Shown here: positions 13,532-42,837 of the stretch, in pieces | Layout of the letters: each line of letters opens with the position of its first letter | Position numbering within the stretch: position 1 is the first letter of the stretch | IMG/VR virus record: IMGVR_UViG_3300042482_000702 | Location: 248,001 to 312,000 of that record | Direction: 5' to 3' (one strand) | Length of the DNA: 64,000 bases | The notes under the pieces: model-generated | The model's input: the letters and a program-made list of their open reading frames with translations, nothing else | What the model was told of the DNA's origin: nothing | Databases searched by the model: none | Made by a program: the position numbers and the translations under genes

Positions 13532-13940
13532 GGGAGTGACACGGAATTGACTATTCGTAATAGTTATTCGGGGCACGTAGTGAGATGTTCTCTATCACTT
13601 AAATCTATGGGTACAACAATTTAGACGGAAACGTTTTAAACAAAATGGCTCTAGTAGGTCTTGTACGTCAAGATGAGCTTGTGAACGTAGCGTAAGCAAA
13701 CACACATTGGGGTCGACGGATATGTGTACCTAGCAACAGAAATATCTTAAGGTGTGATACCACCCGAAGAGTGTCAAGGTCTCGTTTGAGGGTCTACCTA
13801 TTAAAGTGAACCTCCCACAGTTGTAGGTAATGATGGAAAAATTAGAACCTTCTATTTGTCAGTTGAGAATTAACTGAATAAACGTGTAGTCCTTAATAGG
13901 TAATACAAATAACACTTGGGTTCGAGTCCCAACACTTCCA
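13532..13940 (+). ncRNA. ssrA: tmRNA
   Basis: Acceptor GGGAGTG/CACTTCC with G3-U70; 5' GGAATTGAC; T-arm TTGGG-TTCGAGT-CCCAA; internal tag ORF 13627..13695; smpB nearby. Confidence 0.92.
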
Positions 13941-14065
13941 CGTCCACTGGAGAGTCCCAACACCTCCACACAAAAAAGAGACCTAAATGGTCTCTTTTTT
14001 TATTGATAATCACCAATAAAAAAACCACCCGAAGGTGGCTTATTATCAGTTCAAATGTTTATTTT

Positions 14066-14492: not shown

Positions 14493-14930
14493 CTATTTCA
14501 AGTCCCTTTTCATATCTCTTTCGATGTCCCGAGATTTGATGGTATCTCGTTTATCGTATGTTTTCTTCCCTTTGGCAAGAGCAATTTCCATTTTAATTAA
14601 TCCGGTGTCGTTTATGAAGATACGATAAGGAACGATGGTTACACCATTGATTAACTCATTCTCCCACTTATTAAGTTCTTTTCGTTTGGCTAATAGTTTT
14701 CTATCCTTTACGGTCTCGTGGAAGGACCCAAACCCATAATCGGAGATATTCATCCCCTTTATAAATAACTCCCCCTCATTGAAATAACAATACCCTTCAG
14801 AGATGGATACCTTTCCCTGACGAATGGACTTTACCTCTGAACCAACTAGTTTGATTCCCACAATTAATGTCTGTAGGAATGAATACTCAAACTTGGCTTT
14901 CTTATTGACTATGTTAATTGAATTTTTCAT
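14493..14930 (-). CDS. smpB: SsrA-binding protein SmpB
   Basis: NKKAKFEY, GIKLVGSEVKSIR, RKLL, AKGKKTYDKR motifs. Confidence 0.97.
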   Translation of the reverse strand: MKNSINIVNKKAKFEYSFLQTLIVGIKLVGSEVKSIRQGKVSISEGYCYFNEGELFIKGMNISDYGFGSFHETVKDRKLLAKRKELNKWENELINGVTIVPYRIFINDTGLIKMEIALAKGKKTYDKRDTIKSRDIERDMKRDLK

Positions 14931-19798: not shown

Positions 19799-19874
19799 AA
19801 TTTGTTAATATATCAAAATAAATAGTTTAAAAATAAAAAAAGTGAGGACAATTCCTCACTTTTTATCTTTTTTC

Positions 19875-20900
19875 TTACAACTTTTTAAATTCCGGTCTGA
19901 TTAAATTCCATATAATCTCGGAGTAATCCTTACGGTCAAACATTCTAAATAAAATACCTGATAAATGTTTAGGTTGTTCTGACACCCACTGAGCAAATTC
20001 TTTTCTATCTGTGATGGGTTCTTTATCGTTATACTTACCATACATTTTACCATCAAATCTTTTACCAGCATCTTCGGATATTGACATAAAAAAATATCGC
20101 AATTCTTTTACATAATTTTTAATTTTAGTGTAAAATTCATCCGGAACATCTTTTAATAATTCCATCACATCTTCACCATTTTTTAAATACTCCCAAATAC
20201 CTGTTGTAGATACATTAGTCATGATTTTGTGAAGACGCAAATATTCAATACCTTTAACCTTAACCCTATCCCCATTTGAGAACTTCACCACAAACCCCTC
20301 TTGGTCGTTTTTAACCATTTCTTTTAATTGTTTGTAGTCATTGATACCATCGTATTTTTTAACGACATCAAAACCCCATTCATCCCAATCTGTGATGTCA
20401 TAATCTTTACCCCAATTATCGAATGCTCCCAATAGGACCAGTTTCTCTTCACCTTTATAATCCAAAACAATTCTGTTTTCCGGGTAGATAATCTCAAAAC
20501 AAAATGTCATATGTCTGAACATTATGTCAGTGTTGTATTTCTGTAAGAGTTCGGTAGCCTTGATTGCTTGGTCTGATGTAAATGAACCACGAGTGGCAAC
20601 CACCCATTGACCCTGATACCAAAATACGATACCTAATGAACCATCCATTTTTTCATAAACCTCAAAGGTTTCAGTTGGAGTATATTTTCCTTCTTCTATG
20701 TTAAAGAATTTTTTGAATGGTGTTGCAACAATGTCTCCTTTGTCGTCAGTAACTAAACCTCTACACATAAGGGTCACCTCATCCCATAGGTTCTCGTACT
20801 GAACTTTTTCAGAGTAGTTCCATATGGTTAATGGAAGTGTTGGATGTACTTGTTTGTAAAGTAATCCGTCTTCGTAATATTTGTTTAGTTTTTCTAACAT
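19875..20900 (-). CDS. T4 Rnl1-like RNA ligase
   Basis: Motif I EKMDGS, KKFFN, FEII, EGFVV, VKVK. Confidence 0.9.
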   Translation of the reverse strand: MLEKLNKYYEDGLLYKQVHPTLPLTIWNYSEKVQYENLWDEVTLMCRGLVTDDKGDIVATPFKKFFNIEEGKYTPTETFEVYEKMDGSLGIVFWYQGQWVVATRGSFTSDQAIKATELLQKYNTDIMFRHMTFCFEIIYPENRIVLDYKGEEKLVLLGAFDNWGKDYDITDWDEWGFDVVKKYDGINDYKQLKEMVKNDQEGFVVKFSNGDRVKVKGIEYLRLHKIMTNVSTTGIWEYLKNGEDVMELLKDVPDEFYTKIKNYVKELRYFFMSISEDAGKRFDGKMYGKYNDKEPITDRKEFAQWVSEQPKHLSGILFRMFDRKDYSEIIWNLIRPEFKKL

Positions 20901-21038
20901 AATTTTATTTTTTCTTTTTCTTTTTTTTAATAGGTCTTTCAGGTCTTTCTAAATATCTTGGGGGTAAAGGGATTTGTCTTCCCCCTTTGAATACATTCCC
21001 ATTTCCCATCATGAGGAAGGACCAAATAAGCCACCCTA

Positions 21039-21422
21039 TCATAATTTTATTTCAAACCTATCTTTCATTTGTACTAATTTATCCTCCGGAACTCCATGTT
21101 CATTAACACCACCGTGTCTATTTTCTACAATGATGGAGAATACCTTATATCCGTATTCTTTTGCCAAGTCATAGTAAGGTTGCATCTCCCATTCCTGAGT
21201 AAATGTGTTTGATACTACCACTCTTTTGCTTTTGTTTCCCATAAAAACTCTCACAGCGTTTTGACACCAAGCATGAGCCTCTTTTAATTTAGAACCATCA
21301 AATTCGTACTTACCTTCGTAGGTAAAGTATTTATCTGCTTCCATATGCAACCCCCCTAATGATTCCGCCAATGTTGTTTTACCTGAGCCGGGACAACCAC
21401 GAACTAAAAATAATTCTTTCAT
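21039..21422 (-). CDS. P-loop kinase (polynucleotide-kinase-like, AAA_33)
   Basis: GCPGSGKTT, EAD, VVSNT, HGVP. Confidence 0.85.
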   Translation of the reverse strand: MKELFLVRGCPGSGKTTLAESLGGLHMEADKYFTYEGKYEFDGSKLKEAHAWCQNAVRVFMGNKSKRVVVSNTFTQEWEMQPYYDLAKEYGYKVFSIIVENRHGGVNEHGVPEDKLVQMKDRFEIKL

Positions 21423-21423
21423 A

Positions 21424-21705
21424 TTAATTTTTTAAATATTTTACAATCTTTTCAAATTTTTCGGTATCATCCGAATTAATAATAAACTCATCAAACGCTC
21501 CGTACCTACATTGATAACCAAAAATATATTTCAAACCATAACTAACTCTTTCCCAAAAAGGTCGTTTAGTTAAATGAGTATGGATATATACCATCGGATA
21601 TTTCACACCATCAATCTCGTCTTCATCATACATTACCACCATTTGATGTTCTGTGTTATGACAAGAACAGATGAATAAATCTTTTTGTGTTTGAGTAATT
21701 TTCAT
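21424..21705 (-). CDS. Hypothetical protein
   Basis: ORF in operon. Confidence 0.6.
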   Translation of the reverse strand: MKITQTQKDLFICSCHNTEHQMVVMYDEDEIDGVKYPMVYIHTHLTKRPFWERVSYGLKYIFGYQCRYGAFDEFIINSDDTEKFEKIVKYLKN

Positions 21706-21706
21706 A

Positions 21707-22369
21707 TTATTTTCTTTTTCGACCTTCGTCGGTTATCATATCATCTGTGTGATGGTCATCATCCATGTTTGATTTAATTTCTCTCAATTTTACAATCTTA
21801 ATAACATTGTCTAATGAGTATGGTGCAAAAAACAATGAACCATCAATACCAACATCCATTCTACGACCTTTACCAAAGATTTTACCCGTTGGGAGATGTA
21901 CATGTCCATGGAGGTGAATATGACCCTTATTTAACCCATCCCAAGAATCAATAGGGTAGTGCATTAAAACCAAAGTATCAAATTTATACATCAATTTTGT
22001 GTAGTGATTGACACTTGAAAACAATTCCTGACAATCCCCTCGGTTATTTTCAATGTGATGGTCATGATTACCCAATATAAGGTGAATCTCTTGACATACA
22101 ATTCTATCTCTAAAAATTTTCACATTTTCAAATCCGCCAAAACTCCAATCACCCAAATGAATCAAAACATCATCTTGACCAACAACACTATTAATACCGT
22201 TTACGATAGCGTCGTTCATCTCCCCAATATTACTAAAATCTCTTGTTTGAGCAATTGGAACACTCCCATCCGGAAGTCTCCATTCTGTTACACCACGACA
22301 TATATTCTTATGTCCAAAGTGAGTGTCGGATATAATCCAAACTTTTCTATCTTTATCTATCTTAATCAT
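21707..22369 (-). CDS. Calcineurin-like metallophosphoesterase
   Basis: SDTHFGH, HLGD, GNHD, HGHVH. Confidence 0.9.
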   Translation of the reverse strand: MIKIDKDRKVWIISDTHFGHKNICRGVTEWRLPDGSVPIAQTRDFSNIGEMNDAIVNGINSVVGQDDVLIHLGDWSFGGFENVKIFRDRIVCQEIHLILGNHDHHIENNRGDCQELFSSVNHYTKLMYKFDTLVLMHYPIDSWDGLNKGHIHLHGHVHLPTGKIFGKGRRMDVGIDGSLFFAPYSLDNVIKIVKLREIKSNMDDDHHTDDMITDEGRKRK

Positions 22370-22859
22370 ACTGCAAATCTAATTCTTTTTTTCCAAACCA
22401 AAAAGGTTTTTCTCTGTTTTTCCAAGACGCTAAATTAATTTTAGCACCCATATAATAATTTCTATAAGATTCCACAACAGAATCCACCTTAAACTCATCC
22501 GGCATTGCCATTGCTGGTTGAGTAAAACCAATATCCGGGATGTTAGGTCTATTTAAAATACACCATAAAACCACTTCAATTGATTTATGTTTTTTACCAT
22601 ACCTGTGGGTATATTCTTTACCTAATTCCAAACCCAATTCACACAAATACAAATAATTTGATAAACTCTGACGAGTCCATACCGCACAAGGGTGATTTTT
22701 ATGAGACAACTTGTACGGTACTTGGTCGTTAACTTGGTCGGTTACGTGATGAACCGAACATAATAATTGAGCGGTTTCCAAAATCATTTTAACTACGTGT
22801 TTATCTACGTGGTATTGAGCCGATAGTTTAGGATTCTCATCCAAGAAAAATATATTCAT
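22362..22859 (-). CDS. Pyrimidine-dimer DNA glycosylase family protein
   Basis: MNIFFLD...DKHVVKMILETAQLL...HKNHPC...EYTHRYGKKH. Confidence 0.8.
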   Translation of the reverse strand: MNIFFLDENPKLSAQYHVDKHVVKMILETAQLLCSVHHVTDQVNDQVPYKLSHKNHPCAVWTRQSLSNYLYLCELGLELGKEYTHRYGKKHKSIEVVLWCILNRPNIPDIGFTQPAMAMPDEFKVDSVVESYRNYYMGAKINLASWKNREKPFWFGKKELDLQYD

Positions 22860-23037
22860 TATTTATTTTTAAATATTACGGGACAAAGATACAACTATTT
22901 TTTTTTATTCCAAGGGATTGAACCTTTTTTTCTTCCTGTTTTTTCTATACAGATTTCATCAATTTTATCAAATTTATGATATCTCCAAATAAAACCTCCG
23001 GAACTTTTTGACTTACCTAACGAACAATAATGTTTGG

Positions 23038-23496
23038 TTATTTAATAGGTATTCGAACCCTAACACAGGTCTCAGGTTGTTTTTCATTTTTTAAGAAATT
23101 GTTAATCCAACCACAAATATTATGTGCTCCAACAGGATTTGCTGAATGAACATATATCGTTGGAAAAGTAAATTTACCGTCTTTTTTTTCATTTCTTGTC
23201 ATATTAATTCTTTCCGGAAATTCATAATAAAATTGATTAACCAAGAATTTAGCAGCATCATATCCAGTTTTCTCGTTAATATTGTTATAATCCAAAGTGT
23301 AATTTGGCGAGACATTATCAAAATACTCTTTCATAGCTGAATCACCCAAATCGTGGTCTAAGGAGATTGTGCTAATATTTTCTAACCCAATTTTATTAAT
23401 TTCATTAACAAAATCGTCGTAATCTCTTACAACAATCCAATCATCTCCGGTTGGAGTTCTTACATCATCGAGATAAATTCTACAGAGTGTTTTCAT
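23038..23496 (-). CDS. Cyclic-phosphate-processing receiver-domain protein
   Basis: YLDDVR, ISLDHDLG, TGYD, HSANPVG. Confidence 0.8.
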   Translation of the reverse strand: MKTLCRIYLDDVRTPTGDDWIVVRDYDDFVNEINKIGLENISTISLDHDLGDSAMKEYFDNVSPNYTLDYNNINEKTGYDAAKFLVNQFYYEFPERINMTRNEKKDGKFTFPTIYVHSANPVGAHNICGWINNFLKNEKQPETCVRVRIPIK

Positions 23497-34308: not shown

Positions 34309-34381
34309 TGGTCCCGGAGAATTACGATATCCCGACTTCTACATTATGAGTGTAGCACTCTAACCTCTGAGTTACGAGACC
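34309..34381 (-). tRNA. tRNA CAT (Ile2 or Met)
   Basis: Cloverleaf; loop CTCATAA; T-loop ATCGTAA. Confidence 0.8.
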
Positions 34382-34421
34382 AATTATGGGTTTTTAATGA
34401 ACCCATAAAACATATGTCAAT

Positions 34422-34655
34422 TTATTGGTGGTGCTTAATGTACCTCCCAAATTTATCAACCCTCACAGAGAGTTTCTCCAATCTAAAGTTCCAATTATCG
34501 AACTTTCCTAAGCCAGATTTTACTCTCGCCTGTTTAACCGCAGATACTTCTGCCTTCTCACGTCCTTCTTCCGTAGTTTCTACGAAAAAAGTGGGAGCCT
34601 GAACACCAGTCTTACTGGTAGGGACTACTCTCCAAATTCTCAATTTCTGAGTCAT
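34422..34655 (-). CDS. Small hypothetical protein in tRNA array
   Basis: ORF track. Confidence 0.55.
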   Translation of the reverse strand: MTQKLRIWRVVPTSKTGVQAPTFFVETTEEGREKAEVSAVKQARVKSGLGKFDNWNFRLEKLSVRVDKFGRYIKHHQ

Positions 34656-34830
34656 AAATTTTAGCTAATAGCTAAAACTATGTGGAGTTGGGTTGGTTGT
34701 TTTTCATATTAATTAGTTTAATTTTTTAAATAAAATGATGTTTAAATCTCCAAGTAAAAAAAAATACTGTTATTAGTAGTATTATCTTTATTACCTTAAT
34801 AATCTTTTTTCCCATATTGATAATATTTTG

Positions 34831-34915
34831 TATCCGGAGAGGGACTTGAACCCTCAATCTCCTTTCGGAAAACTAGATTTTAAGTCTAGCGTGTATACCA
34901 TTTCACCACCCAGAT
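34831..34915 (-). tRNA. tRNA-Leu(TAA)
   Basis: Loop CTTAAAA; long variable arm with GAAA. Confidence 0.9.
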
Positions 34916-35135
34916 GTGTTCCCCCAATGAGATTAGTTTGGGGTAGAATTTTTTCGGTTTTTCTATTCAAAAGTCGAGACGGTCTTACCCGCACATAAAA
35001 GTCAACTATTACTTGGAGGTGAGTTAGTATGCTCCCTTTTTTCCAAAGACCTCATCTATCAAACCGTTTGAGGCGTCAGCTACATCTTTGTTTAAGAAAC
35101 GATGCCAAATCTCTTGAGTATCTCTATCTCAATTG

Positions 35136-35216
35136 AGCTTCCGGTTGGATTCGAACCAACGTGCCATTCGGTCCTACTTACAAAATAGGTGCAATCAACC
35201 ACTATGCGACGGAAGC
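35136..35216 (-). tRNA. tRNA-Thr(TGT) with enlarged variable region
   Basis: Loop TTTGTAA; 12-nt variable region. Confidence 0.85.
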
Positions 35217-35426
35217 CTGTTGCAGAGTATTTTTTTTAAGTAGAAGTCAACTCTGTCTCTTAAACTACTAAAAGAAACTGTCCAAGGTCTATCCTGCTTT
35301 CGCTGTCCAGATTTTTCTCTGTTTCTTAAAACATCATCACTTCGGCCACATTGGGAGAACCGCAGTTCCCACGTTGTTTAAGGAGGTAGTTGGCGGTGTA
35401 TCACACCGAGTTATGATAATGTATTG

Positions 35427-35500
35427 TACCCCCAGTGAGAGTCGAACTCACAAAACTCTTCATCCTAAGTGAAGCGACTTTCCCGTTTGTCCACAGGGGT
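35427..35500 (-). tRNA. tRNA-Leu(TAG) with short variable loop
   Basis: Loop CTTAGGA; variable region AGTTTT. Confidence 0.85.
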
Positions 35501-35562
35501 AAATTGATGGGACTTTAACCCATCTGTTGACTATAACAAAAACATAAAGAAAGAAAAATTAG

Positions 35563-35684
35563 TAGTGTAGATAGGAATCGAACCTACCTCGATGAATTAC
35601 TTGTAATATGCACCAACTCTTCTCTCCAATCCTAGTATTAAGGAGTGTTACCTACAAATTACCATCACTCAACCCTTTTACACC
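35563..35684 (-). ncRNA. tRNA-like RNA: acceptor and T-arm, no D-stem, long irregular helix in place of the anticodon arm
   Basis: GGTGTA/TACACT; GTAGG-TTCGATT-CCTAT; GATG GTAATTTGTA ... TACAAGTAATT CATC. Confidence 0.6.
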
Positions 35685-35689
35685 ATTTG

Positions 35690-35761
35690 TGACTCCACAG
35701 GGATTCGAACCCCGATAATTTCCTTAGAAGAGAAATGTCCTATCCGTTGAACGATGGAGCC
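35690..35761 (-). tRNA. tRNA-Arg(TCT)
   Basis: Loop CTTCTAA. Confidence 0.9.
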
Positions 35762-35766
35762 AATTT

Positions 35767-35984
35767 ATTCTGTTACCGACATAGATTGGTAATTAAGTGT
35801 GAAAGCCCAAACCCTTTCACTCCCGTATTATCATCCTGCCACATTCTTGACGAATGCCGACGTTTTCACTTAACCTTCCGTTAGACATGCGAATCTATGT
35901 TTTCTGTATGTGGTGAGTAACTTCCTTCCCCACTTGTGTTTCCGAGATATCGAGGGCACCATACTGTCTAACGTCAAACAGAAT
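35767..35984 (-). ncRNA. Candidate ~220-nt pseudoknotted ncRNA
   Basis: Terminal 8-bp stem plus two crossing 9-bp helices. Confidence 0.55.
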
Positions 35985-36194
35985 ATAATTTTTAAAATAG
36001 TTTGACCAAATTTTTCACCATTGCGGTCTTAAGGAGCTATGACTTCATCTCCATGTCCGTTATGGGTAATTACTCCCAGATGGATGACCGGTGCGCCGTT
36101 GTCTTTCATCATACTTTTCACCAACCTATGTGTTAAAGGGTTCCGGCAGTGTCCCCGAAGGTTACTTCATATAATTACTTTTTCACTATTTTTG

Positions 36195-36266
36195 AGCGAA
36201 TGGAGGGAATCGAACCCTCATCCCTTGATTGGAAGTCAAGAGTAATGACCATTATACGACATTCGC
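36195..36266 (-). tRNA. tRNA-Gly(TCC)
   Basis: Loop CTTCCAA; U73. Confidence 0.92.
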
Positions 36267-36399
36267 AGTTTAGATGAACTTCGGACTTGTGTACCGAAAT
36301 GAGACCCAATAATTAAATCACTAACCCCGGGTGTGGTCTATTCATCTATTTTTTTAAGCTTATACCTTTAAAATAAATTTTAATTTTAAGCTTATAAGC

Positions 36400-36573
36400 T
36401 TAAACTTTCGTTTTAAGGTTGTTAATCTCCTTCTCGATTCTTTTCTTATCAGAATCAGTTAAAGGAATCTTGGTATTCATAGTACCCTTTTCGGTTTTTA
36501 CACCATTTTTTAATTGTTTCTCCAACACTTCAAGAACTCTTTGTTGTCTTGACCTTTTCGCTGCTGTTGCCAT
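36400..36573 (-). CDS. Small basic protein (57 aa, not in ORF track)
   Basis: MATAAKRSRQQRVLEVLEKQLK...INNLKTKV. Confidence 0.55.
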   Translation of the reverse strand: MATAAKRSRQQRVLEVLEKQLKNGVKTEKGTMNTKIPLTDSDKKRIEKEINNLKTKV

Positions 36574-36595
36574 ACGGATTTAGTTATTAAATTAG

Positions 36596-36668
36596 TAGCG
36601 TAGGGCAGGTAACGCTCCTGCTTTGGTCGGCTTATGAGACCGATGAGATACTATACCTCCCCCTCGCG
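36596..36668 (-). tRNA. tRNA-Met(CAT), initiator-like
   Basis: C1 mismatched with position 72; loop CTCATAA; T-loop AGCGTTA. Confidence 0.7.
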
Positions 36669-36683
36669 ATGTATTATTTTTTG

Positions 36684-36755
36684 CGGTCTATGAGAGAATC
36701 GAACTCTCATCTCTACCGTGACAGGGTAGCATCCTAGCCGTTGAACGAATAGACC
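36684..36755 (-). tRNA. tRNA-Asp(GTC)
   Basis: Loop CTGTCAC; G73. Confidence 0.92.
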
Positions 36756-36896
36756 AAAATTTTCAATCCAAAGGTGACAAACCTATAACAATTGAAAGAG
36801 AAAGAACCGTGTTTCCCGGGTAGTGACTTCCCGTATTCTGTCTTCCTGTTTTGTTTTACAAAGATAGTTATTAAATCTTTAATAACCAATTTTTTT

Positions 36897-37502
36897 TTAC
36901 ACCATTTTATTAAGTGTTGGTAAATACCATTTAAATCTCACCGCCATTACTCTAACTGATATAATCACTAATGAAGTGGTTAAATATAACACATCTGAGT
37001 TTAGGTTAAATTTCCTAAGTATGAAGAACACAATCCCCCCTAATATACAAATGGTAGCATATATTTCTTTTTTAAAGATAACCGGTATTTCAGCACATAG
37101 AATATCTCTAATCACACCACCAAAACAAGCGGTCATTGTACCTAATGCGATACATATAATGGGATGTAGACCAATGTTTATTCCTTTTTCTAACCCAATC
37201 AATGTGAATACCCCTAAACCGATTGTATCAAATATAAAAAGATATATTTTAAATTTCTCTATTAGTTGTTTGAATAATAATGTTACTATAAACCCTGTTA
37301 TTATTACATAGATATAATCTATGTTGAGCATCCATCCCACCGGTGTTCTTCCAATCATTACATCTCTCAGTGTTCCTCCACCTAATGCGGTTACGAATGT
37401 AATTATAAACACACCAAATAAATCCATTTTTTTATCTATGGATACTAAAGCTCCGGATATGGCAAATGCCAGTGTTCCTATTAGGTCTAATAAATTAAAC
37501 AT
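36897..37502 (-). CDS. TRIC/UPF0126 (YadS-like) membrane protein
   Basis: Duplicated GTLAFAISGA...GGGTLRD and GLGVF...FGGVIRD repeats. Confidence 0.9.
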   Translation of the reverse strand: MFNLLDLIGTLAFAISGALVSIDKKMDLFGVFIITFVTALGGGTLRDVMIGRTPVGWMLNIDYIYVIITGFIVTLLFKQLIEKFKIYLFIFDTIGLGVFTLIGLEKGINIGLHPIICIALGTMTACFGGVIRDILCAEIPVIFKKEIYATICILGGIVFFILRKFNLNSDVLYLTTSLVIISVRVMAVRFKWYLPTLNKMV

Positions 37503-37549
37503 TAATCATTTATTTTAAATTAATTGGTCTTAACAATAGACCTTTTTTG

Positions 37550-37621
37550 TGGAGCTACACGGTAACGCTCCGTGTTCTATGATTTGCAAAACCATTGTAA
37601 TTGCTTTTATACGACAGCCCC
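37550..37621 (-). tRNA. tRNA-Ala(TGC)
   Basis: G3-U70; loop TTTGCAA; T-loop AGCGTTA. Confidence 0.85.
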
Positions 37622-37682
37622 AATTTTGGATAGATGAGGTTCTATCCGGACCAGTACCTTCTCCCTTGGGAGATGTCAGTTG

Positions 37683-37754
37683 TAGCCCCACCGGGAGTCG
37701 AACCCGACTTTTATGGATGAAAACCATATGTCCTAACCGATAGACGATAGGGCC
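37683..37754 (-). tRNA. tRNA-Glu(TTC)
   Basis: Loop TTTTCAT. Confidence 0.9.
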
Positions 37755-38108
37755 GTTTTGTATTACCAATATGTCAATTAACTTGTTTGTTTTTGATGGT
37801 ACAAAGATAATGCTTTATTTCATTCCACCAAACTTATTCTTCAATAATATTATTCAGAACCAAATCTAATGCGTGGTCTTCATCCCACTCTGATTCATCA
37901 ACAACATTTTTTAATCCGTAGGTTACTCCCAATATCGGTGAGTAATCCATAACCAATTCTTCTCTAATCATACCTGTTATTATTTTTTAGTTATTTTATC
38001 CACATATTTTTTACCTACGGCTACTAATAAAATAAAACATATCAATAATCCACTAATAATAACCACCAATTGTTCTCCTGTATATTCTTCCATATCTTTA
38101 ATTTGTTT

Positions 38109-38339
38109 TTACCAAGTATTGGTGTTATAAATACAAAACTCTGAACCCACTTGGGCGTTTCTCCAATCATTCGGATATAGATAAAATAATTTATCATCAC
38201 CGGTACATTCATTTCTAATTACAACAGAATAATCTCGTACTCTATTACTAACCACTAAACCACAATTACAACTCACATACTCATTAATAGAACAAGATAA
38301 GAATAGTGGGATAACTATAATTAAAATTAATTTTTTCAT
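38109..38339 (-). CDS. Small lipoprotein-like protein (start MKKLIL)
   Basis: Signal peptide ending FLSC; promoter at about 38357. Confidence 0.6.
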   Translation of the reverse strand: MKKLILIIVIPLFLSCSINEYVSCNCGLVVSNRVRDYSVVIRNECTGDDKLFYLYPNDWRNAQVGSEFCIYNTNTW

Positions 38340-38395
38340 AACCCTTTTATTTTTGACAAAGATACAACTTAATTTCATTCTACCAAATATAAATC

Positions 38396-38532
38396 AAAAA
38401 AAAAATCCACCTTTTTTTGAAGATGGATTTTTAAATATTTTTTTACTTAAATATATATCATACCATCGTCTTCCAAGTTGTATCTCTACCCTCAGTTCCC
38501 GCTATCGTAAGTAATATGTTTAAAGTTTGCAT
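38396..38532 (-). promoter_or_regulatory. Leader peptide (38458..38532) plus terminator: putative attenuator
   Basis: 24-aa ORF MQTLNILLTIAGTEGRDTTWKTMV; GAAGA/GATGG in the ORF can pair with the terminator arm CCATCTTC. Confidence 0.5.
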
Positions 38533-38662
38533 TTTTTGTGTTATTGTAATTTCTAATAAATATACGACATTTTGTGAAAGTGTCAAGTGGTTTTAAAATT
38601 ATTTTTTAAACTTAATCATAATTTAAGATATTTATAGTAAATAAACTTTTAAAAATTCAATT

Positions 38663-38833
38663 ATGAATAAAGAACAAATTTTTGGTGTTATTCGCCACGT
38701 ATTCACTGCCATTGGTGGTATTGTCATTGCACAAGGTTACATATCTGATAGTATGTACACTGAATTATCCGGAGCGATATTAACATTAACTGGTGTAATT
38801 TGGTCAATTGTTGCTAAAAAATCTACAGTATAA
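38663..38833 (+). CDS. Small two-TM putative holin (56 aa, not in ORF track)
   Basis: MNKEQIFGVIRHVFTAIGG...GVIWSIVAKK; TATTTATA upstream. Confidence 0.65.
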   Translation: MNKEQIFGVIRHVFTAIGGIVIAQGYISDSMYTELSGAILTLTGVIWSIVAKKSTV

Positions 38834-39597
38834 TAAACAGAAAAAGGTTAGAGAAATCTAACCTTTTTTTATGCCTTTAAGTTAAATAAAAAAAAGCTTA
38901 ACAACCCCGCCCTCGGGTCGTAGCGGGCAACTTGAGAATTACTTCTCGTGGGAATTCCGGAATTGGTTGTGTTCCTCACCGGCGTACCAGTCCTTATCTA
39001 TCCTTTAACCGTATTTCTACGGTGCTACTGTTGGGAGGTCACCCCTATCAACACACCTAGTCCATTAGTTTTTTAGAGTATGGACACCCCGGTTGTTAAA
39101 CTTTTTAATTTAATATTCTCTTACATAACGGCGATTATCGCCGGTATTAACCTAATTGGTAAATAAAAAAACAGACAATGGGGATTCTCCGATATTTCAG
39201 TCTTAGGGGACTAGACGGGCATCATACCCGTGTTTACCCTCGGCGGTCTCTTGGTTTGGTTGATTACTCCAAACCTCACCCCTACACTACCACTGACGTA
39301 AGTTATAGGTCTGTTTTTAATTCTTTGTAAAACAACAGACGGCTTTGAAGTACATCCACACCAACAATTATGACCGACTTCACCTTATGTGGAAGTTTAG
39401 TTTTACAATATCTATCAAGATTTACCCCAGTCTTTAGGTCGCTATTAATACCTTTAACCCATACTCTCGGAACACTATGGAGATGGAATCAAACCATCTA
39501 ATAACCCGTCGGTTATAGCGTCAGCCTTATATTTCCTATCTTTTGGAGATAACTTTCGTCTGTCACCTTATTCAACCTTATATGAATAAATCTTTTG

Positions 39598-39704
39598 CCC
39601 TTCCAGTGGGAATCGAACCCACATACTCTTAATACATTCTTGGAATGGTTACCGGAGGGAGATGTATTCGTCTCTGTGTTTTGCTCTTTTTAAACTACAG
39701 AAGG
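39598..39704 (-). ncRNA. tRNA-like RNA with an expanded anticodon arm
   Basis: Acceptor CCTTCTG/TGGAAGG; D- and T-arms present; about 55-nt central region with AATACAT/ATGTATT helix. Confidence 0.55.
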
Positions 39705-39710
39705 ATTTTG

Positions 39711-39781
39711 CACGTTTGATAGGTCTCGAACCCATACAAATTCTTTTGGAGAGAATTATGCTACCATTACATCACAAACGT
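39711..39781 (-). tRNA. tRNA-Trp(CCA)
   Basis: Loop CTCCAAA. Confidence 0.9.
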
Positions 39782-39782
39782 A

Positions 39783-40430
39783 TTATTTTAACCATTTTCT
39801 AACAGCGTTATCACTAACACCATATTTACGACCTGTTCCTCTATACCCAAGATTAATAATATCTTGTTTTATTTGTTCTATGGACGGTCTTTCAACTTTT
39901 CTATTTTGTTTATTTGAACATTTAATACATTTATCACTTTTTTTATCTTTTGTACTACCACATTCACAATGATATTTAATTTTATTGGATTTCCCGGAAT
40001 ATGTACTAGTTTGGGAGTGACAATTAGGACATAAAAATCTTAAATTTTCTATTCTATTATCATTATTAACTCCATTTATATGGTCTAAATGTAGACTAAT
40101 ATTTTTACCATTCCACACCCCATTATTACCACATTCAATACATTTATATTCAAGTAAATTTTTCTTTAATATTCTATTTTTAATTTTTTGTCTTGGAAAT
40201 GTTGAATTTTCAACAAAAACATCCTCATCTAATCTAACCTCTTTAGGTCCAGTCCCATAATAATTATATTTAGGAATCTCTAATCCCAATTTAATTATTC
40301 TATCTTTAATGTTCCTATAACCACCCGAACCATTTGGTGATAAATTAAATAATAAAATAACCTCTCTCATAGATTTTGAATTATTCAAAATTTCAAATAA
40401 CTCTTCTTTTGTAATAGTTTTTAAGTTCAT
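39783..40430 (-). CDS. HNH homing endonuclease inside the tRNA array
   Basis: CIECG...LHLDHINGVNNDNRIENLRFLCPNCHSQT; C-terminal HTH. Confidence 0.9.
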   Translation of the reverse strand: MNLKTITKEELFEILNNSKSMREVILLFNLSPNGSGGYRNIKDRIIKLGLEIPKYNYYGTGPKEVRLDEDVFVENSTFPRQKIKNRILKKNLLEYKCIECGNNGVWNGKNISLHLDHINGVNNDNRIENLRFLCPNCHSQTSTYSGKSNKIKYHCECGSTKDKKSDKCIKCSNKQNRKVERPSIEQIKQDIINLGYRGTGRKYGVSDNAVRKWLK

Positions 40431-40661
40431 ATTATGTCTTTTATTATAAATATCTTAAAAAATACCAAAGTTCACCATAACCTATGTTTTACCAAAAATA
40501 ATAACATAATCATTCGTAGTCCCCTGCCGGGCAACCCTCCTACTTTTTCACACAATCCGGATGCCTCCAAATCTAATTTTCTTTTTTACCCCTATTAAGA
40601 AACGCGTTTTCCGTTCGGTAGTTCAAGCCCATTTTCGTGAGTTAAATAATTATGTTATTTG

Positions 40662-40744
40662 AGTTCAGGGTCGGATTCGAACCGACGAGGACTTTCGTCA
40701 TTGGTTTTGCAGACCAATCTAATCAACCACTCTAGCACCTGAAC
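40662..40744 (-). tRNA. tRNA-Cys(GCA) with long variable arm
   Basis: Loop CTGCAAA; U73; GAC-GAAA-GTC variable hairpin. Confidence 0.88.
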
Positions 40745-40805
40745 ATTTAAAGTAAAATATAATTTACAAATACACCCATTTTTGTAAATTATATTTAATG
40801 TTAAT

Positions 40806-41186
40806 TTAATAACCTATTTCATCTTTAACCTCCCATTGTTTATCAATGGGGATTCTTTCAATCTTTTCCACCGGAACAAATCCGTCAAATCCTTTGTCTT
40901 TAACATCTTCAAAATGTTCTATGGTGTCCAAGTAAAATCCAAATTGATATCTAACGTATTGGAACTTCTCTCCGTCCCAATAAGCGACGTGGTTGTTTCT
41001 ACAGAAACCATTATACCACCCCTCAACCATTTCATTTTTTGGTATCATCATTTCTATTTTTATATTAGCACCCTTGTCTATATAGCCTGAATCTCTCAAG
41101 CGCCATGCCTTATTAGGGTCTCTATATAAACTTAGGGTCACGTAGTTACTGGATGAACCCAAATAACTTACTTGCTGAGAACTCAT
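40806..41186 (-). CDS. Hypothetical protein (true start probably downstream, near MIPKNEM)
   Basis: ORF; the annotated 5' end overlaps an RNA motif. Confidence 0.55.
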   Translation of the reverse strand: MSSQQVSYLGSSSNYVTLSLYRDPNKAWRLRDSGYIDKGANIKIEMMIPKNEMVEGWYNGFCRNNHVAYWDGEKFQYVRYQFGFYLDTIEHFEDVKDKGFDGFVPVEKIERIPIDKQWEVKDEIGY

Positions 41187-41250
41187 TTGTGTTGATAGAG
41201 GCGTTCTCTATACGTTTAATTTACCTATTCCTTTCTCAAGGGAACAACAC
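41171..41250 (-). ncRNA. Pseudoknotted scaffold RNA, copy A
   Basis: GTGTTGTTCCCTTGAGAAAGGAA-[insert]-AACACAAATGAGTTCTCAG. Confidence 0.65.
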
Positions 41251-41547
41251 ATCTACCATTTCTGATAGTATCTTTATGTAAATAACCAAGACAATTGTAC
41301 AAATGCTACCACGTATTTCTTTGGTTCACTTATTATTTACAAAGGTTTCAATGTTTAACCTATTTTTACAACGATACAATTACATTTCTACTTTTGAGAA
41401 TCTTTCTCAAAAAAACTAATCTTTTTCTATGATTAACATACTCATCAGCATCATTGGCTTTATGACCTCTAAATATTGATTCGGTTATCTCACAATCCAA
41501 TTTAATAATTTCGGTTATTATCTCCTCCGTGGTTAAATTACTTTTTT

Positions 41548-41871
41548 TCATATCTTCTCAAATTCGTCTTCAAATCCGTACCACTCATCACCATTTTCAT
41601 CTTCGTACCAACATTTGTATTCTCGCTCGTACCGATTCCAATCAATTCTTGTTAATTCAACTTCATTTCCCCCATCTTTGTTTATAACCACTTCACCCAC
41701 TTGGAATGTTTGTGGTGCGTAATTGTCGATTGTTTTACTTTGAATAATTAAATCTCCAACACTTTTAACCTCATCGGTTTGGATATTGGTGTAATTTCCT
41801 CCGGATGATAATTTCCACCCTTTACTATACAACCAAATCGTAAAATCTAAAATTTCTTTTTCTAATAACAT
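41548..41871 (-). CDS. Hypothetical protein
   Basis: ORF downstream of a TAnnTTTG promoter at about 41893. Confidence 0.55.
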   Translation of the reverse strand: MLLEKEILDFTIWLYSKGWKLSSGGNYTNIQTDEVKSVGDLIIQSKTIDNYAPQTFQVGEVVINKDGGNEVELTRIDWNRYEREYKCWYEDENGDEWYGFEDEFEKI

Positions 41872-41903
41872 AATACATCTGTTTTGTGAGTACAAAGATA
41901 ATA

Positions 41904-42236
41904 CTATTTTTTACCCAATCCTACAATCGTAACACTTTTAATCTTTTTTTTACCTTTTTTAACTTTTTTCTCAACTTTTGGTTGGGAAACTCTACTTTGT
42001 TTCGCCAATACCTTCCTTGTTCTTTTACACATTTTTTCTAAAATCTCCAATGATTCAAGATTCTTAAAGAAAACAGTTAGAAGTTCTTCCGATTCGTCTG
42101 AAGAATAAATATTATCACCAATCATTCTTGGTTTTAATAATTTATTAAAACTAATAAATGGTGTTTGAGTAATATTCTCAATTCCCGCACCCATAGACAA
42201 TTCTCCCAATCCCGCAACAACAATACTTTTTTTCAT
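41904..42236 (-). CDS. Hypothetical protein
   Basis: ORF track. Confidence 0.55.
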   Translation of the reverse strand: MKKSIVVAGLGELSMGAGIENITQTPFISFNKLLKPRMIGDNIYSSDESEELLTVFFKNLESLEILEKMCKRTRKVLAKQSRVSQPKVEKKVKKGKKKIKSVTIVGLGKK

Positions 42237-42297
42237 AATTTTTATATATTTAATTTCGACAAAGATAATACAATTTTTTAAACTACCAAACTTTATT

Positions 42298-42807: not shown

Positions 42808-42837
42808 GATTTCTAATTTTTAATTAAACATTTTTTT

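What the first reader, a model, noticed from the sequence alone, without database searches (positions are those of the whole stretch)
19875..23496. Split RNA heal-and-seal toolkit matching the tRNA arsenal
Rnl1-like ligase, stand-alone kinase, metallophosphoesterase and cyclic-phosphate receiver are clustered. Two HAD phosphatases (58971, 61115), a nucleotidyltransferase (7136) and an AEP-like protein (42838) lie elsewhere. The set is functionally equivalent to T4 Pnk/Rnl1 anti-PrrC repair but modular. With tmRNA/SmpB, tRNAs and mimics it suggests a multilayer counter-defence against translation shut-off.
Basis: partly seen in the sequence, partly recalled or inferred. Interest (0 to 1): 0.6.

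Follow-up and report, generated by a model that had tools for sequence, protein, structure and literature searches.

The report
Phage RNA break-repair gene cluster
A lake-water jumbo phage carries, side by side, genes for an RNA ligase, an RNA-end kinase and two phosphate-removing enzymes that together should mend tRNAs cut by bacterial defence nucleases; the cluster is real, but comparative genomics has already described this kind of module in many phages.

Summary
On the minus strand of 19875-23496 lie six ORFs. In order they are cREC (PF20274), a divergent Pyr_excise-like protein, an aq_1665-type metallophosphoesterase (MPE), a 93-aa unknown, a 127-aa stand-alone polynucleotide-kinase-like P-loop kinase, and an Rnl1-family RNA ligase. 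A hairpin terminator follows the ligase. Catalytic residues are intact and invariant in relatives for all four enzymes. The two distal HADs are HAD_SAK_2 RNA-repair phosphatases. SmpB, tmRNA and about 24 tRNA genes are present. The 'AEP-like' ORF is not confirmed, and the nucleotidyltransferase is only a borderline Pol-beta fold.

The MPE-kinase(-Rnl1)(-cREC) module recurs in 71 of 80 metagenomic phage loci. It also occurs in isolated phages of E. coli, Vibrio, Pseudomonas, Aeromonas and Flavobacterium.

The most likely function is healing and sealing of 2',3'-cyclic-phosphate/5'-OH RNA breaks, probably in tRNA. This is a split analogue of T4 Pnkp+Rnl1. No activity has been shown for this MPE family or for any cREC.

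The module was already described from genome comparisons (Iyer et al. 2021, 2022), so this is a new member of a known kind. Interest is modest. Its value lies in pointing to two uncharacterised enzyme families that could be tested.

The parts
23038..23496 (-). cREC (cyclic-phosphate processing receiver-like) protein, 152 aa; candidate 2',3'-cyclic phosphodiesterase
   Evidence: PF20274 hit at 3e-19. D10, D11, D47, H48, D49, H117, S118 and N120 are invariant in 23 relatives. The AF2 model has pLDDT 89; its only solved look-alikes are weak CheY/receiver domains.
22362..22859 (-). Divergent Pyr_excise (endonuclease V-like) protein, 165 aa. It is in the operon and overlaps the MPE start by 8 bp. 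It is probably not an RNA-repair enzyme.
   Evidence: PF03013 hit at 4.9e-4, below the cut-off; phrog_624 at 1.3e-60. Atlas look-alikes are Pyr_excise clusters. It is present in only 10 of 80 kinase loci.
21707..22369 (-). Binuclear metallophosphoesterase, 220 aa, of the aq_1665 family; candidate 3'-end healing enzyme
   Evidence: PF00149 hit at 1.6e-7; phrog_547. The only solved relative is 1xm7 aq_1665, at 1e-7 with the profile. The metal ligands D15, H17, D74, N101, H102, H137, H156 and H158 are invariant. It lies within 6 kb of the kinase in 53 of 80 loci, often directly adjacent.
21424..21705 (-). 93-aa ORF of unknown function, conserved between MPE and kinase only in the close clade
   Evidence: No Pfam or NCBIfam hit. 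Homologues occur in small Flavobacterium siphophages, away from any repair gene. Present in 12 of 80 kinase loci.
21039..21422 (-). Stand-alone P-loop kinase, 127 aa, of the polynucleotide 5'-kinase clade
   Evidence: AAA_33 hit at 3.8e-11. T4 Pnk is the best solved sequence relative. The AF2 model has pLDDT 85.6, and its top Foldseek hits are T4 Pnk, mammalian PNKP, CthPnk, Pnkp1 and fungal Trl1 kinase. G14, K15, T17, D30, R102 and R122 are invariant.
19875..20900 (-). Rnl1-family ATP-dependent RNA ligase, 341 aa
   Evidence: PF09511 hit at 1.2e-19; phrog_562 at 6e-69. T4 Rnl1 (2c5u) matches at 7e-12, with the lysine nucleophile K84 in a KxDG motif. R47, K64, F66, K84, D86, G87, R104, E136, G202, K214 and K216 are invariant in 17 relatives. 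It is the only ATP-dependent RNA ligase in the genome, and there is no RtcB.
19837..19864 (.). Bidirectional hairpin terminator 10 bp after the ligase stop; it marks the end of the transcription unit
   Evidence: 12-bp stem followed by a T run, on both strands.
22884..22913 (-). Bacteroidota-type promoter-like motif (TTG-N19-TAnnTTTG) upstream of the Pyr_excise-like ORF. A second copy lies at 22374-22401, upstream of the MPE.
   Evidence: The pattern occurs 13 times on the minus strand against 3.4 +/- 1.8 in shuffles. RNA-library contigs cover 19962-22974 but hardly reach cREC (weak evidence).
58971..59564 (-). HAD_SAK_2 phosphatase, 197 aa; candidate 2'/3'-phosphomonoesterase
   Evidence: PF18143 hit at 3.4e-18. 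The DxD nucleophile motif is at D12/D14. Relatives lie near the kinase in 12 of 80 loci.
61115..61606 (-). HAD_SAK_2 phosphatase, 163 aa
   Evidence: PF18143 hit at 4.7e-26. The DxD motif is at D7/D9.
14493..14930 (-). SmpB (context: ribosome rescue)
   Evidence: PF01668 hit at 8.9e-47.
13532..13943 (+). tmRNA (context: ribosome rescue)
   Evidence: Rfam RF00023, 62.3 bits against a gathering score of 47. ARAGORN does not call it.
34309..45929 (-). tRNA gene array (context), interspersed with HNH endonuclease genes

Best explanation

**Proposed steps.**
1. The cyclic phosphate is opened and removed to give a 3'-OH. The candidates are cREC (opening), the aq_1665-type metallophosphoesterase, and the two HAD_SAK_2 phosphatases encoded 36-40 kb away (phosphate removal).
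2. The 127-aa stand-alone kinase transfers a phosphate from NTP to the 5'-OH.
3. The Rnl1-type ligase adenylylates itself on K84, transfers AMP to the 5'-phosphate and seals the nick.

**How it relates to T4.** It is a split version of T4 Pnkp+Rnl1. The kinase has lost the fused HAD phosphatase, and separate enzymes take over the 3'-end chemistry.

**Shown here:** family membership, intact active-site residues, the kinase fold, the operon layout, and recurrent co-location in many phages.

**Inferred:** every enzymatic activity, the division of labour at the 3' end, tRNA as the substrate, and the counter-defence purpose.
For: **Family hits are above curated cut-offs** for the ligase, kinase, MPE, cREC and both HADs.

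**Ligase.** The residues equivalent to those I recall as essential in T4 Rnl1 (R54, K75, F77, K99, E159, E227/G228, K240/K242) are present and conserved (E201 nearly invariant, the others invariant): R47, K64, F66, K84, E136, E201/G202, K214/K216.

**Kinase.** The P-loop and the Asp aligned with T4 Pnk D35 are invariant. The predicted fold matches polynucleotide kinases first.

**MPE.** All metal ligands are invariant.

**Neighbourhoods in metagenomes.** In 80 metagenomic phage loci chosen only by the kinase, the MPE is within 6 kb in 53, Rnl1 in 30, cREC in 21 and HAD_SAK in 12. Only 9 loci show the kinase alone.

**The same module occurs in isolated phages of five host genera:**
- Escherichia phage HMD-6: cREC|Rnl1 divergent from kinase|MPE.
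- Vibrio phage Thalassa.
- Pseudomonas phage Pyxpy02.
- Aeromonas phage phiA047.
- Flavobacterium phage immuto.

**What the genome lacks.** It has no RtcB, no second RNA ligase, no 2H phosphoesterase and no KptA. A 3'-OH-requiring ligase therefore depends on the clustered phosphoesterases.

**Transcription.** A terminator sits directly after the ligase.

**Chance.** Clustering by chance has probability about 3e-5.

**Literature.** Published comparative genomics reaches the same prediction.
Against: - No member of the aq_1665 MPE family or of cREC has a demonstrated activity on RNA ends. The MPE lacks the GDxxDRG/GNHE signature of lambda-phosphatase/CthPnkp (nearest structure is aq_1665).
- cREC is also linked in the literature to NAD+/ADP-ribose chemistry. 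A second cREC paralogue in this genome sits away from any ligase, near a Tad6-like anti-Thoeris ORF.
- The kinase is only distantly related to T4 Pnk (E 2.5e-4), and no Arg equivalent to T4 R38 is evident.
- The ligase scores far below NCBI's equivalog cut-off for T4 RnlA (67.7 against 242 bits).
- Its C-terminal region, which is the tRNA-specificity domain in T4, aligns to T4 only through residue 263.
- The two HADs are 36-40 kb away, among ORFs without annotation.
- A Pyr_excise-like (DNA repair-type) gene sits inside the operon.
- RNA-library contigs do not prove transcription.
Confidence: 0.62

Rival explanations
1. cREC and/or the metallophosphoesterase do not act on RNA ends. They degrade small-molecule immune signals or NAD+/ADP-ribose derivatives (cyclic ADPR isomers, ADPR>P, cyclic nucleotides). 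Only the kinase and ligase deal with RNA.
For: - Iyer et al. place cREC in the NAD+-ADPr network, note that it is often fused to Nudix, and state that it is experimentally uncharacterised.
- In coliphage HMD-6, cREC lies beside SIR2 and a pyrophosphohydrolase.
- In the Vibrio and Pseudomonas phages, the module lies near NAMPT and Prs genes.
- A second cREC paralogue in this genome stands alone, 4.4 kb from a Tad6-like ORF.
- RNA-library contigs hardly cover cREC, although they cover the other five ORFs.
Against: - cREC heads the same gene order in about 12 related contigs. It lies within 6 kb of the kinase in 21 of 80 loci.
- Other cREC relatives sit beside CCA-type nucleotidyltransferases, HAD and MPE genes.
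- The genome shows no SIR2, MazG or Prs homologue of the kind found in HMD-6 or Thalassa (phmmer; low sensitivity).
- The ligase needs a 3'-OH, and the genome has no 2H enzyme or KptA to provide one.
Confidence: 0.15
2. The operon serves the phage's own RNA biogenesis rather than repair of defence damage. It would process or join the phage's unusual tRNAs, tRNA-like RNAs, tmRNA or GOLLD RNA.
For: - The operon lies between a GOLLD RNA/tmRNA/SmpB region (13.5-15.4 kb) and a tRNA array of about 24 genes.
- Several tRNAs are atypical: a 92-nt gene, Thr and Cys tRNAs with long variable arms, and tRNA-like genes with degenerate T-loops.
- Immuto has tRNAs directly beside its MPE and cREC genes.
Against: - No intron, permuted or split RNA gene was found.
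- The same module occurs in phages with few or no tRNAs nearby.
- Heal-and-seal enzymes of this type are established as damage-repair enzymes in T4 (established knowledge).
Confidence: 0.1
3. It is a DNA-end repair operon. The Pyr_excise-like glycosylase/lyase makes nicks with blocked ends, and the MPE and kinase clean them, as PNKP or PdeM do.
For: - The Pyr_excise-like ORF is translationally coupled to the MPE by an 8-bp overlap.
- The MPE has a weak hit to PdeM, the 'ligase-associated DNA damage response' phosphoesterase (5e-4).
- Polynucleotide kinases of this fold also act on DNA, as in mammalian PNKP.
Against: - The sealing enzyme belongs to the Rnl1 RNA ligase family, not a DNA ligase family.
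- The Pyr_excise-like gene is missing from most kinase-MPE loci (10 of 80), and from the close relative L002.
- It lacks an obvious counterpart of the T4 endonuclease V catalytic Glu23 (my reading of the sequence; not tested).
Confidence: 0.06
4. The Rnl1 homologue works mainly as a tail-fibre attachment factor, like the second activity of T4 gp63, and its clustering with the kinase and phosphoesterases has no functional meaning.
For: phrog_562 is annotated 'RNA ligase and tail fiber protein attachment catalyst'. T4 gp63 is known to have both activities (established knowledge).
Against: - All ligase catalytic residues are invariant.
- Ligase and kinase genes are adjacent or overlapping in distant phage genera.
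- No structural genes lie in the operon.
Confidence: 0.03

Closest known systems
Bacteriophage T4 Pnkp (pseT) + Rnl1 (gene 63) tRNA repair against the PrrC anticodon nuclease
   Same: The ligase is of the Rnl1 family with the same catalytic residues. The kinase has the T4 Pnk kinase-domain fold, P-loop and general-base Asp. The overall logic is the same: heal the 5'-OH and the 2',3'>P, then seal.
   Different: - The kinase is a 127-aa stand-alone protein without the C-terminal HAD phosphatase domain.
- 3'-end healing must come from separate proteins: the aq_1665-type MPE, cREC and the HAD_SAK_2 enzymes.
- The genes are clustered in one operon, whereas to my knowledge the T4 genes are dispersed.
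- The ligase is only about 25-30% identical to T4 Rnl1 over the catalytic domain (my estimate from the alignment) and has a shorter C-terminal region.
- No cognate nuclease is known.
Sirtuin-linked RNA-repair neighbourhood of Escherichia phage V5 / Proteus phage Mydo type (Iyer et al. 2022, PMC9503650) and the jumbo-phage RNA-repair repertoire (Iyer et al. 2021, PMC7824862)
   Same: It shares the T4-like ligase, cREC, nucleotide kinase and calcineurin-like phosphoesterase. An rV5-like coliphage (HMD-6) shows exactly these four genes together. The 2021 paper describes stand-alone HAD 'Swiss-army-knife' phosphatases, tRNAs and cREC-ligase linkage in jumbo phages.
   Different: - No sirtuin or MazG homologue was detected in this genome (single-sequence search, so absence is not proven).
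- The gene order differs, and all genes are on one strand.
- There are extra Pyr_excise-like and 93-aa ORFs.
- The host is probably a member of the Bacteroidota rather than the Proteobacteria.
Bacterial Pnkp/Hen1 (Clostridium thermocellum Pnkp; Capnocytophaga Pnkp1/Rnl/Hen1)
   Same: The combination is kinase + binuclear metallophosphoesterase + adenylyltransferase/ligase. The kinase fold matches CthPnk and Pnkp1. phrog_8238 is a fused kinase-MPE-ligase family, and all three proteins here touch it weakly.
   Different: - The three activities are on three separate polypeptides.
- The MPE belongs to the aq_1665 family, not the lambda-phosphatase-like family of CthPnkp.
- No Hen1 methyltransferase was looked for or seen.
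- The ligase is Rnl1-type.
Fungal/plant Trl1 tRNA ligase (ligase-kinase-CPDase)
   Same: It combines Rnl1-like ligase chemistry with a polynucleotide kinase of the same fold; fungal Trl1 kinase structures are among the fold hits.
   Different: - Trl1 uses a 2H cyclic phosphodiesterase and leaves a 2'-phosphate that is removed by Tpt1.
- This genome has no 2H enzyme and no Tpt1/KptA.

Membership tests
Rnl1 (T4 RnlA-type ATP-dependent RNA ligase, PF09511) | Profile match above the curated cut-off | tested here: met
   PF09511 scores 71.5 bits against a cut-off of 28.3. The NCBIfam equivalog TIGR02308 scores only 67.7 against 242 bits, so it is a family member, not a T4 RnlA equivalog.
Rnl1 (T4 RnlA-type ATP-dependent RNA ligase, PF09511) | Covalent nucleotidyltransferase motifs: Lys nucleophile in KxDG (I), Glu (III), EG (IV), KxK (V), plus the Rnl1-specific upstream Arg and Lys/Phe | tested here: met
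   K84/D86/G87, E136, E201/G202 and K214/K216, plus R47 and K64/F66. These align with T4 positions and are conserved (E201 nearly invariant, the others invariant) in 17 relatives. The list of essential T4 residues is from my knowledge of the published mutagenesis.
Rnl1 (T4 RnlA-type ATP-dependent RNA ligase, PF09511) | C-terminal domain that confers tRNA specificity | tested here: inconclusive
   The PHROG profile is matched to residue 340. The alignment to the T4 structure stops at residue 263, and the tail is about 40 aa shorter than in T4.
Rnl1 (T4 RnlA-type ATP-dependent RNA ligase, PF09511) | Sealing of 3'-OH/5'-phosphate RNA nicks | not testable with these tools
   Needs a biochemical assay.
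Polynucleotide 5'-hydroxyl kinase (T4 Pnk / CthPnk / PNKP clade of P-loop kinases) | P-loop GxxGxGK[ST] and a general-base Asp about 15-20 residues downstream | tested here: met
   G9-T17 (GCPGSGKTT) and D30 align with T4 G9-T17 and D35. They are invariant in 38 relatives.
Polynucleotide 5'-hydroxyl kinase (T4 Pnk / CthPnk / PNKP clade of P-loop kinases) | Fold closest to polynucleotide kinases rather than to nucleoside/nucleotide or sugar kinases | tested here: met
   Foldseek ranks 1-17 are T4 Pnk, mouse PNKP and CthPnk. Pnkp1 and fungal Trl1 kinases are within the top 30. PFK-2 and gluconate kinase rank lower.
Polynucleotide 5'-hydroxyl kinase (T4 Pnk / CthPnk / PNKP clade of P-loop kinases) | Basic residues that bind the acceptor's phosphates and the lid (T4 R38, R126) | tested here: inconclusive
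   R102 and R122 are invariant, and by my inspection they fall where the T4 lid Arg lies. No Arg is seen at the R38-equivalent position, and the tool alignment ends at residue 95.
T4 Pnkp (bifunctional kinase-phosphatase) | C-terminal HAD 3'-phosphatase domain fused to the kinase | tested here: not met
   The ORF is 127 aa and ends at a stop. Relatives are 126-139 aa. It is not a Pnkp, only the kinase half.
Lambda-phosphatase / CthPnkp-type 2',3'-cyclic phosphodiesterase-phosphomonoesterase | Motifs GDxxDRG and GNHE, and sequence similarity to lambda-phosphatase/CthPnkp | tested here: not met
   The motifs here are GDWSFG and GNHD. The profile search of solved structures finds only aq_1665 (1xm7), at 1e-7.
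Calcineurin-like metallophosphoesterase superfamily (PF00149), aq_1665-like branch | Five metal-binding motifs: DxH, GD, GNH[DE], H, GHxH | tested here: met
   D15/H17, D74, N101/H102, H137 and H156/H158 are all invariant in 32 relatives. PF00149 scores 32.4 bits against a cut-off of 21.5.
cREC (PF20274, cyclic-phosphate processing receiver domain) | Profile match above the cut-off, and conserved acidic residues at the receiver-type active site | tested here: met
   69.9 bits against a cut-off of 27. D10/D11 and D47(-H48-D49) are invariant.
cREC (PF20274, cyclic-phosphate processing receiver domain) | Receiver (CheY-like) fold | tested here: inconclusive
   The model is confident (pLDDT 89). 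The best solved matches are receiver domains, but only at E about 0.04 and TM about 0.45. There is a roughly 45-aa helical insert.
cREC (PF20274, cyclic-phosphate processing receiver domain) | Hydrolysis of 2',3'-cyclic phosphate (the activity the name implies) | not testable with these tools
   According to PMC9503650 this has never been shown for any member.
HAD_SAK_2 (PF18143, 'Swiss army knife' RNA-repair HAD phosphatase) | Profile match above the cut-off, and the DxD nucleophile motif | tested here: met
   66.8 and 92.3 bits against a cut-off of 27.5. The motifs are D12xD14 and D7xD9.
rV5-type sirtuin-linked RNA repair neighbourhood (Iyer et al. 2022) | Sirtuin and MazG genes linked to the ligase, cREC and kinase | tested here: not met
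   phmmer with the SIR2 and MazG proteins of phage HMD-6 against all ORFs of the genome gave no hit, while the HMD-6 ligase, kinase and MPE hit the cluster. The search used single sequences, so sensitivity is limited.
RlaP / CCA-adding nucleotidyltransferases as repair partners (claim for ORF 7136) | Match to PF10127 or PF01743 | tested here: not met
   There is no PF10127 match in the genome. The only PF01743 gene is at genome position 54616-55035, outside the window. ORF 7136 shows only a borderline PF01909 hit with a GS...DxD motif.
Archaeo-eukaryotic primase (claim for ORF 42838) | Any AEP/primase profile match | tested here: not met
   No Pfam or NCBIfam hit; only phrog_14949, of unknown function.

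The most novel reading that the evidence does not exclude
cREC and the aq_1665-type metallophosphoesterase may together form a previously unassayed two-step route. cREC would open the 2',3'-cyclic phosphate and the MPE would remove the resulting phosphate. This would replace the HAD domain of T4 Pnkp and the 2H/KptA routes. If so, two widespread phage enzyme families without any known activity get their first function, and this abundant lake-phage clade can undo damage by a broad class of metal-independent tRNA nucleases. The same enzymes might also destroy cyclic-phosphate immune signals.

A still bolder reading, which the data do not exclude, is that the operon processes the phage's own atypical tRNAs.
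Probability: 0.3. Interest if true: 0.5.

Novelty: new member of a known kind. Interest (0 to 1): 0.3.

Why it matters
Host nucleases that cut tRNA are a widespread anti-phage defence, and T4 Pnkp/Rnl1 is the established experimental example of a phage repairing such cuts.

The split MPE-kinase-Rnl1(-cREC) module seen here is very common. The kinase alone has at least 7,996 sequence clusters in metagenomes and matches in 627 isolated phage records. Yet none of its 3'-end enzymes has been assayed.

This window adds a complete, intact example from an abundant freshwater jumbo phage: the stretch is held in lake-water metagenomes of about 19 studies. The same genome combines the module with tmRNA/SmpB and about 24 tRNAs.

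The value is as a pointer to tractable experiments in cultivable relatives, not as a new principle.

Tried and rejected
- **Nucleotide search against isolated phages (megablast).** No match. Protein-level searches were needed.
- **Complex prediction on MPE + kinase.** The idea was that the split proteins re-associate like a fused Pnkp. The result was no verdict (scores 0.00, 0.32, 0.00). It is neither support nor evidence against.
- **Solved relatives of cREC and the Pyr_excise-like protein.** The profile search for cREC found none, and phmmer of the Pyr_excise-like protein found none.
- **The 93-aa ORF as a repair accessory.** Rejected. Its only isolated-phage homologues are in 37-kb Flavobacterium siphophages with no repair genes nearby. 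It occurs in only 12 of 80 kinase loci.
- **The 'AEP-like' ORF at 42838 and RlaP identity for ORF 7136.** Not supported.
- **A second repair cluster around the two HADs.** Ten neighbouring ORFs have no Pfam hit.
- **Other repair or rescue enzymes in the genome.** RtcB, an Rnl2-type ligase, PTH2, KptA/Tpt1 and 2H were all absent.
- **Sigma-70 promoter scan.** Not enriched (32 found against 36.9 expected), so it was replaced by a Bacteroidota-type motif test.
- **Burroughs & Aravind 2016.** The paper could not be read because it is not held.
- **Other limits.** No alternative genetic code was used, and the large representative-protein search was not used.

Full report
**Setting.** The window is positions 248001-312000 of a 322,477-bp viral contig from IMG/VR that CheckV rates complete. 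It is AT-rich (about 32% G+C). It carries a terminase large subunit, about 24 tRNA genes, a tmRNA, a GOLLD RNA and SmpB. The stretch is held by lake-water metagenomes from about 19 studies.

The nearest isolated relatives of several cluster proteins are Flavobacterium and Cellulophaga phages. A Bacteroidota-type promoter pattern (TTG-N17-21-TAnnTTTG) occurs 13 times on the coding strand against 3.4 +/- 1.8 in shuffles. The host is therefore probably a freshwater member of the Bacteroidota; this is an inference.

**Observation.** The finding's coordinates are exact ORF boundaries. On the minus strand, in order of transcription:
- cREC, 23496-23038: PF20274 at 3e-19.
- A 165-aa divergent Pyr_excise/phrog_624 protein, 22859-22362.
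- A 220-aa metallophosphoesterase (MPE), 22369-21707: PF00149; phrog_547 at 4.8e-44.
- A 93-aa unknown ORF, 21705-21424.
- A 127-aa AAA_33 kinase, 21422-21039.
- A 341-aa Rnl1-family ligase, 20900-19875: PF09511 at 1.2e-19; phrog_562 at 6e-69.

A 12-bp hairpin with T runs on both strands follows the ligase stop at 19864-19837.

The genome holds one Rnl1, one AAA_33 kinase, three Metallophos genes and two cREC genes. One of each falls within 3.6 kb by chance with probability about 3e-5.

Of the distal items:
- Both HADs are HAD_SAK_2.
- SmpB and tmRNA are real.
- The ORF at 7136 is a borderline Pol-beta nucleotidyltransferase with a GS...DxD motif, and it is neither RlaP nor a CCA-adding enzyme.
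- The 'AEP-like' ORF at 42838 is unsupported.

**The enzymes.**

*Ligase.* phmmer finds T4 Rnl1 (2c5u) at 7e-12. The alignment places K84 on the T4 lysine nucleophile in a KxDG motif. Across 17 relatives (46-95% identity), R47, K64, F66, K84, D86, G87, R104, E136, G202, K214 and K216 are invariant. They correspond, through the alignment, to the residues I recall as essential in T4 Rnl1. It is a family member but not a T4 RnlA equivalog. Its C-terminal part is shorter than that of T4.

*Kinase.* The best solved sequence relative is T4 Pnk (2.5e-4), with the P-loop and D30 aligned on T4 D35. An AlphaFold model (pLDDT 85.6) matches T4 Pnk, mammalian PNKP, CthPnk, Pnkp1 and fungal Trl1 kinase ahead of other P-loop kinases. 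G14, K15, T17, D30, R102 and R122 are invariant. There is no phosphatase domain.

*MPE.* All five metal-binding motifs are invariant. The protein belongs with Aquifex aq_1665 (1xm7), which has no known function. It does not belong with lambda-phosphatase/CthPnkp.

*cREC.* D10, D11, D47-H48-D49, H117, S118 and N120 are invariant. The model is confident (pLDDT 89), but only weakly resembles CheY-like receivers. No solved relative exists.

*HADs.* Both have the DxD nucleophile motif.

**Comparative evidence.** Twelve of 18 contigs found with cREC keep cREC, (Pyr_excise-like), MPE and the 93-aa ORF/kinase in the same order, as far as each contig reaches. Eight of them also include the ligase. Inserts of 1-2 kb appear at variable places. 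In the remaining cREC contigs sampled (L011, L013, L015), cREC sits beside CCA-type nucleotidyltransferase, NT5C-type HAD or MPE genes.

Eighty loci were chosen by the kinase alone (61-83% identity). Within 6 kb of the kinase:
- the MPE is present in 53, often directly adjacent in either order;
- Rnl1 is present in 30;
- cREC is present in 21;
- HAD_SAK is present in 12;
- the kinase is alone in only 9.

Many of these contigs are truncated and some are near-duplicates, so the counts are not independent.

Isolated phages show the same module:
- Escherichia phage HMD-6: pyrophosphohydrolase, SIR2, cREC and Rnl1, divergent from kinase and MPE.
- Vibrio phage Thalassa: Rnl1, an unknown ORF, kinase and MPE, then Prs and NAMPT.
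- Pseudomonas phage Pyxpy02: HD, MPE, Rnl1 and kinase, then Prs and NAMPT.
- Aeromonas phage phiA047: Rnl1 overlapping the kinase.
- Flavobacterium phage immuto: tRNAs, MPE, cREC and a phosphoesterase.

The kinase matches 627 isolated phage records and the MPE matches 1190. Their host breakdowns are strikingly parallel.

1. The kinase makes the 5'-phosphate.
2. cREC, MPE and the HADs produce the 3'-OH.
3. Rnl1 seals the nick.

The genome has no RtcB, which could seal cyclic ends directly. It also has no Rnl2-type ligase, no 2H phosphodiesterase and no KptA. The 3'-OH-dependent ligase therefore needs the clustered phosphoesterases.

Which enzyme opens the cyclic phosphate and which removes the monoester is inferred, not shown. 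That tRNA is the substrate is inferred from the T4 precedent and from the genomic company (tRNAs, tmRNA/SmpB).

Promoter-like motifs lie upstream of the Pyr_excise-like ORF and of the MPE. Contigs from an RNA library of a 97-98% identical relative cover 19962-22974 but hardly cover cREC or the DNA beyond the terminator, whereas DNA runs cover everything evenly. This hints at a five-gene transcript that ends at the hairpin, with cREC transcribed separately. Contigs cannot prove transcription, so this is weak evidence.

**Rivals.**
- *cREC and possibly the MPE act on NAD+/ADP-ribose-derived or cyclic-nucleotide signals.* The literature links cREC to that network and says it is uncharacterised. 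A second cREC paralogue (34% identical) lies outside the window, beside a phage Hsp70 gene and 4.4 kb from a Tad6-like ORF.
- *The operon matures the phage's own unusual RNAs.* Some tRNAs are atypical.
- *DNA-end repair together with the Pyr_excise-like protein.*
- *A gp63-like tail-fibre role for the ligase.*

Each is less well supported than the RNA heal-and-seal reading, for the reasons given in the Rival explanations section.

**Known or new.** Iyer et al. 2021 (PMC7824862) named cREC and found it operonically linked to RNA ligases. They also described polynucleotide kinases, HAD 'Swiss-army-knife' phosphatases and, in a few jumbo phages, calcineurin-like phosphatases as the end-healing set. 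Iyer et al. 2022 (PMC9503650) describe the phage V5/Mydo neighbourhood: sirtuin + T4-like ligase + cREC + nucleotide kinase + MazG, with an occasional calcineurin-like phosphoesterase.

The present operon is a sirtuin-less, MazG-less version. No homologue of either was detected (limited sensitivity). It sits in a probable Bacteroidota jumbo phage, with the two HADs placed elsewhere. It is therefore a new member of a known, computationally predicted kind. Nothing about it has been tested biochemically, in this phage or, as far as the searched literature shows, in any other.

**Verdict.** Novelty is low and interest is about 0.3. The useful outcome is a clear set of assays on two unassayed enzyme families, in cultivable phages that share the module.

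Noticed in passing
window 15007-15413 (-): A full-length GOLLD RNA (Rfam RF02032, 288 bits against a gathering score of 150). It lies between SmpB (14493-14930) and the tRNA genes at 16.0-16.6 kb, 4.5 kb downstream of the repair operon.
   Followed up: no
window 13532-13943 (+) and 14493-14930 (-): The phage encodes both tmRNA (62 bits; not called by ARAGORN) and SmpB (8.9e-47), on opposite strands.
   Followed up: partly
window 16045-16136 (-), 35135-35216 (-), 40661-40744 (-): Atypical tRNAs.
- A 92-nt gene that ARAGORN calls Pro(UGG). It would then have a variable arm of about 23 nt, or it can alternatively be read as a GAA-anticodon tRNA with a hairpin inserted in the D-loop.
- tRNA-Thr(UGU) of 82 nt and tRNA-Cys(GCA) of 84 nt, with variable arms of 12-14 nt. 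Flavobacterium phage immuto also has an 86-nt tRNA-Cys.
   Followed up: partly
window 34309-34381, 45177-45249, 45480-45550, 16531-16607 (all -): Four tRNA-like genes found by Rfam but not by ARAGORN. By my reading their anticodon loops are CAU, GAA, UAC and GAA. Three have degenerate T-loops, and one has C instead of U at position 33.
   Followed up: partly
genome 313057-313431 (+), i.e. L105:8057-8431, just outside the window: A second, stand-alone cREC paralogue (124 aa, 34% identical to the operon's cREC). It lies next to a phage Hsp70/DnaK gene (L105:6009-7883; its 3' part is window 63009-63965) and 4.4 kb from an ORF matching Tad6, a type I Thoeris inhibitor (PF25188 at 1.5e-16; L105:12816-13520).
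   Followed up: partly
window 8566-10617 (+): A phage-encoded ClpB/Hsp104-like double AAA+ ATPase, 683 aa (AAA_2 at 1.5e-68; ClpB_D2-small).
   Followed up: no
window 23522-28426 (+): A 1634-aa protein with BspA-type LRR_5 repeats, DUF285 and three Fib_succ_major domains. It starts only 25 bp from the divergently oriented cREC start codon. In relatives it is shorter or rearranged.
   Followed up: no
window 39783-40430 (-), 42298-42807 (-): HNH homing-endonuclease genes are interspersed in the tRNA array. In related contigs, inserts of 1-2 kb appear at varying places inside the repair operon: between kinase and ligase in L002, L005 and L008, and between cREC and the next gene in L003, L004 and L014.
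   Followed up: no
window, whole; e.g. 22884-22913 (-), 22374-22401 (-), 17034-17063 (-): Bacteroidota-type promoter pattern TTG-N17-21-TAnnTTTG. It is enriched on the coding strand (13 found against 3.4 +/- 1.8 in shuffles; 9 against 4.4 on the other strand). Together with the best isolate hits to Flavobacterium and Cellulophaga phages, this points to a Bacteroidota host.
   Followed up: partly
window 21039-21422 (-) relatives: The 127-aa kinase family is extremely abundant in metagenomes. At least 7,996 clusters at 90% identity passed E 1e-5, and the best 120 are all 80% or more identical to the query.
   Followed up: no
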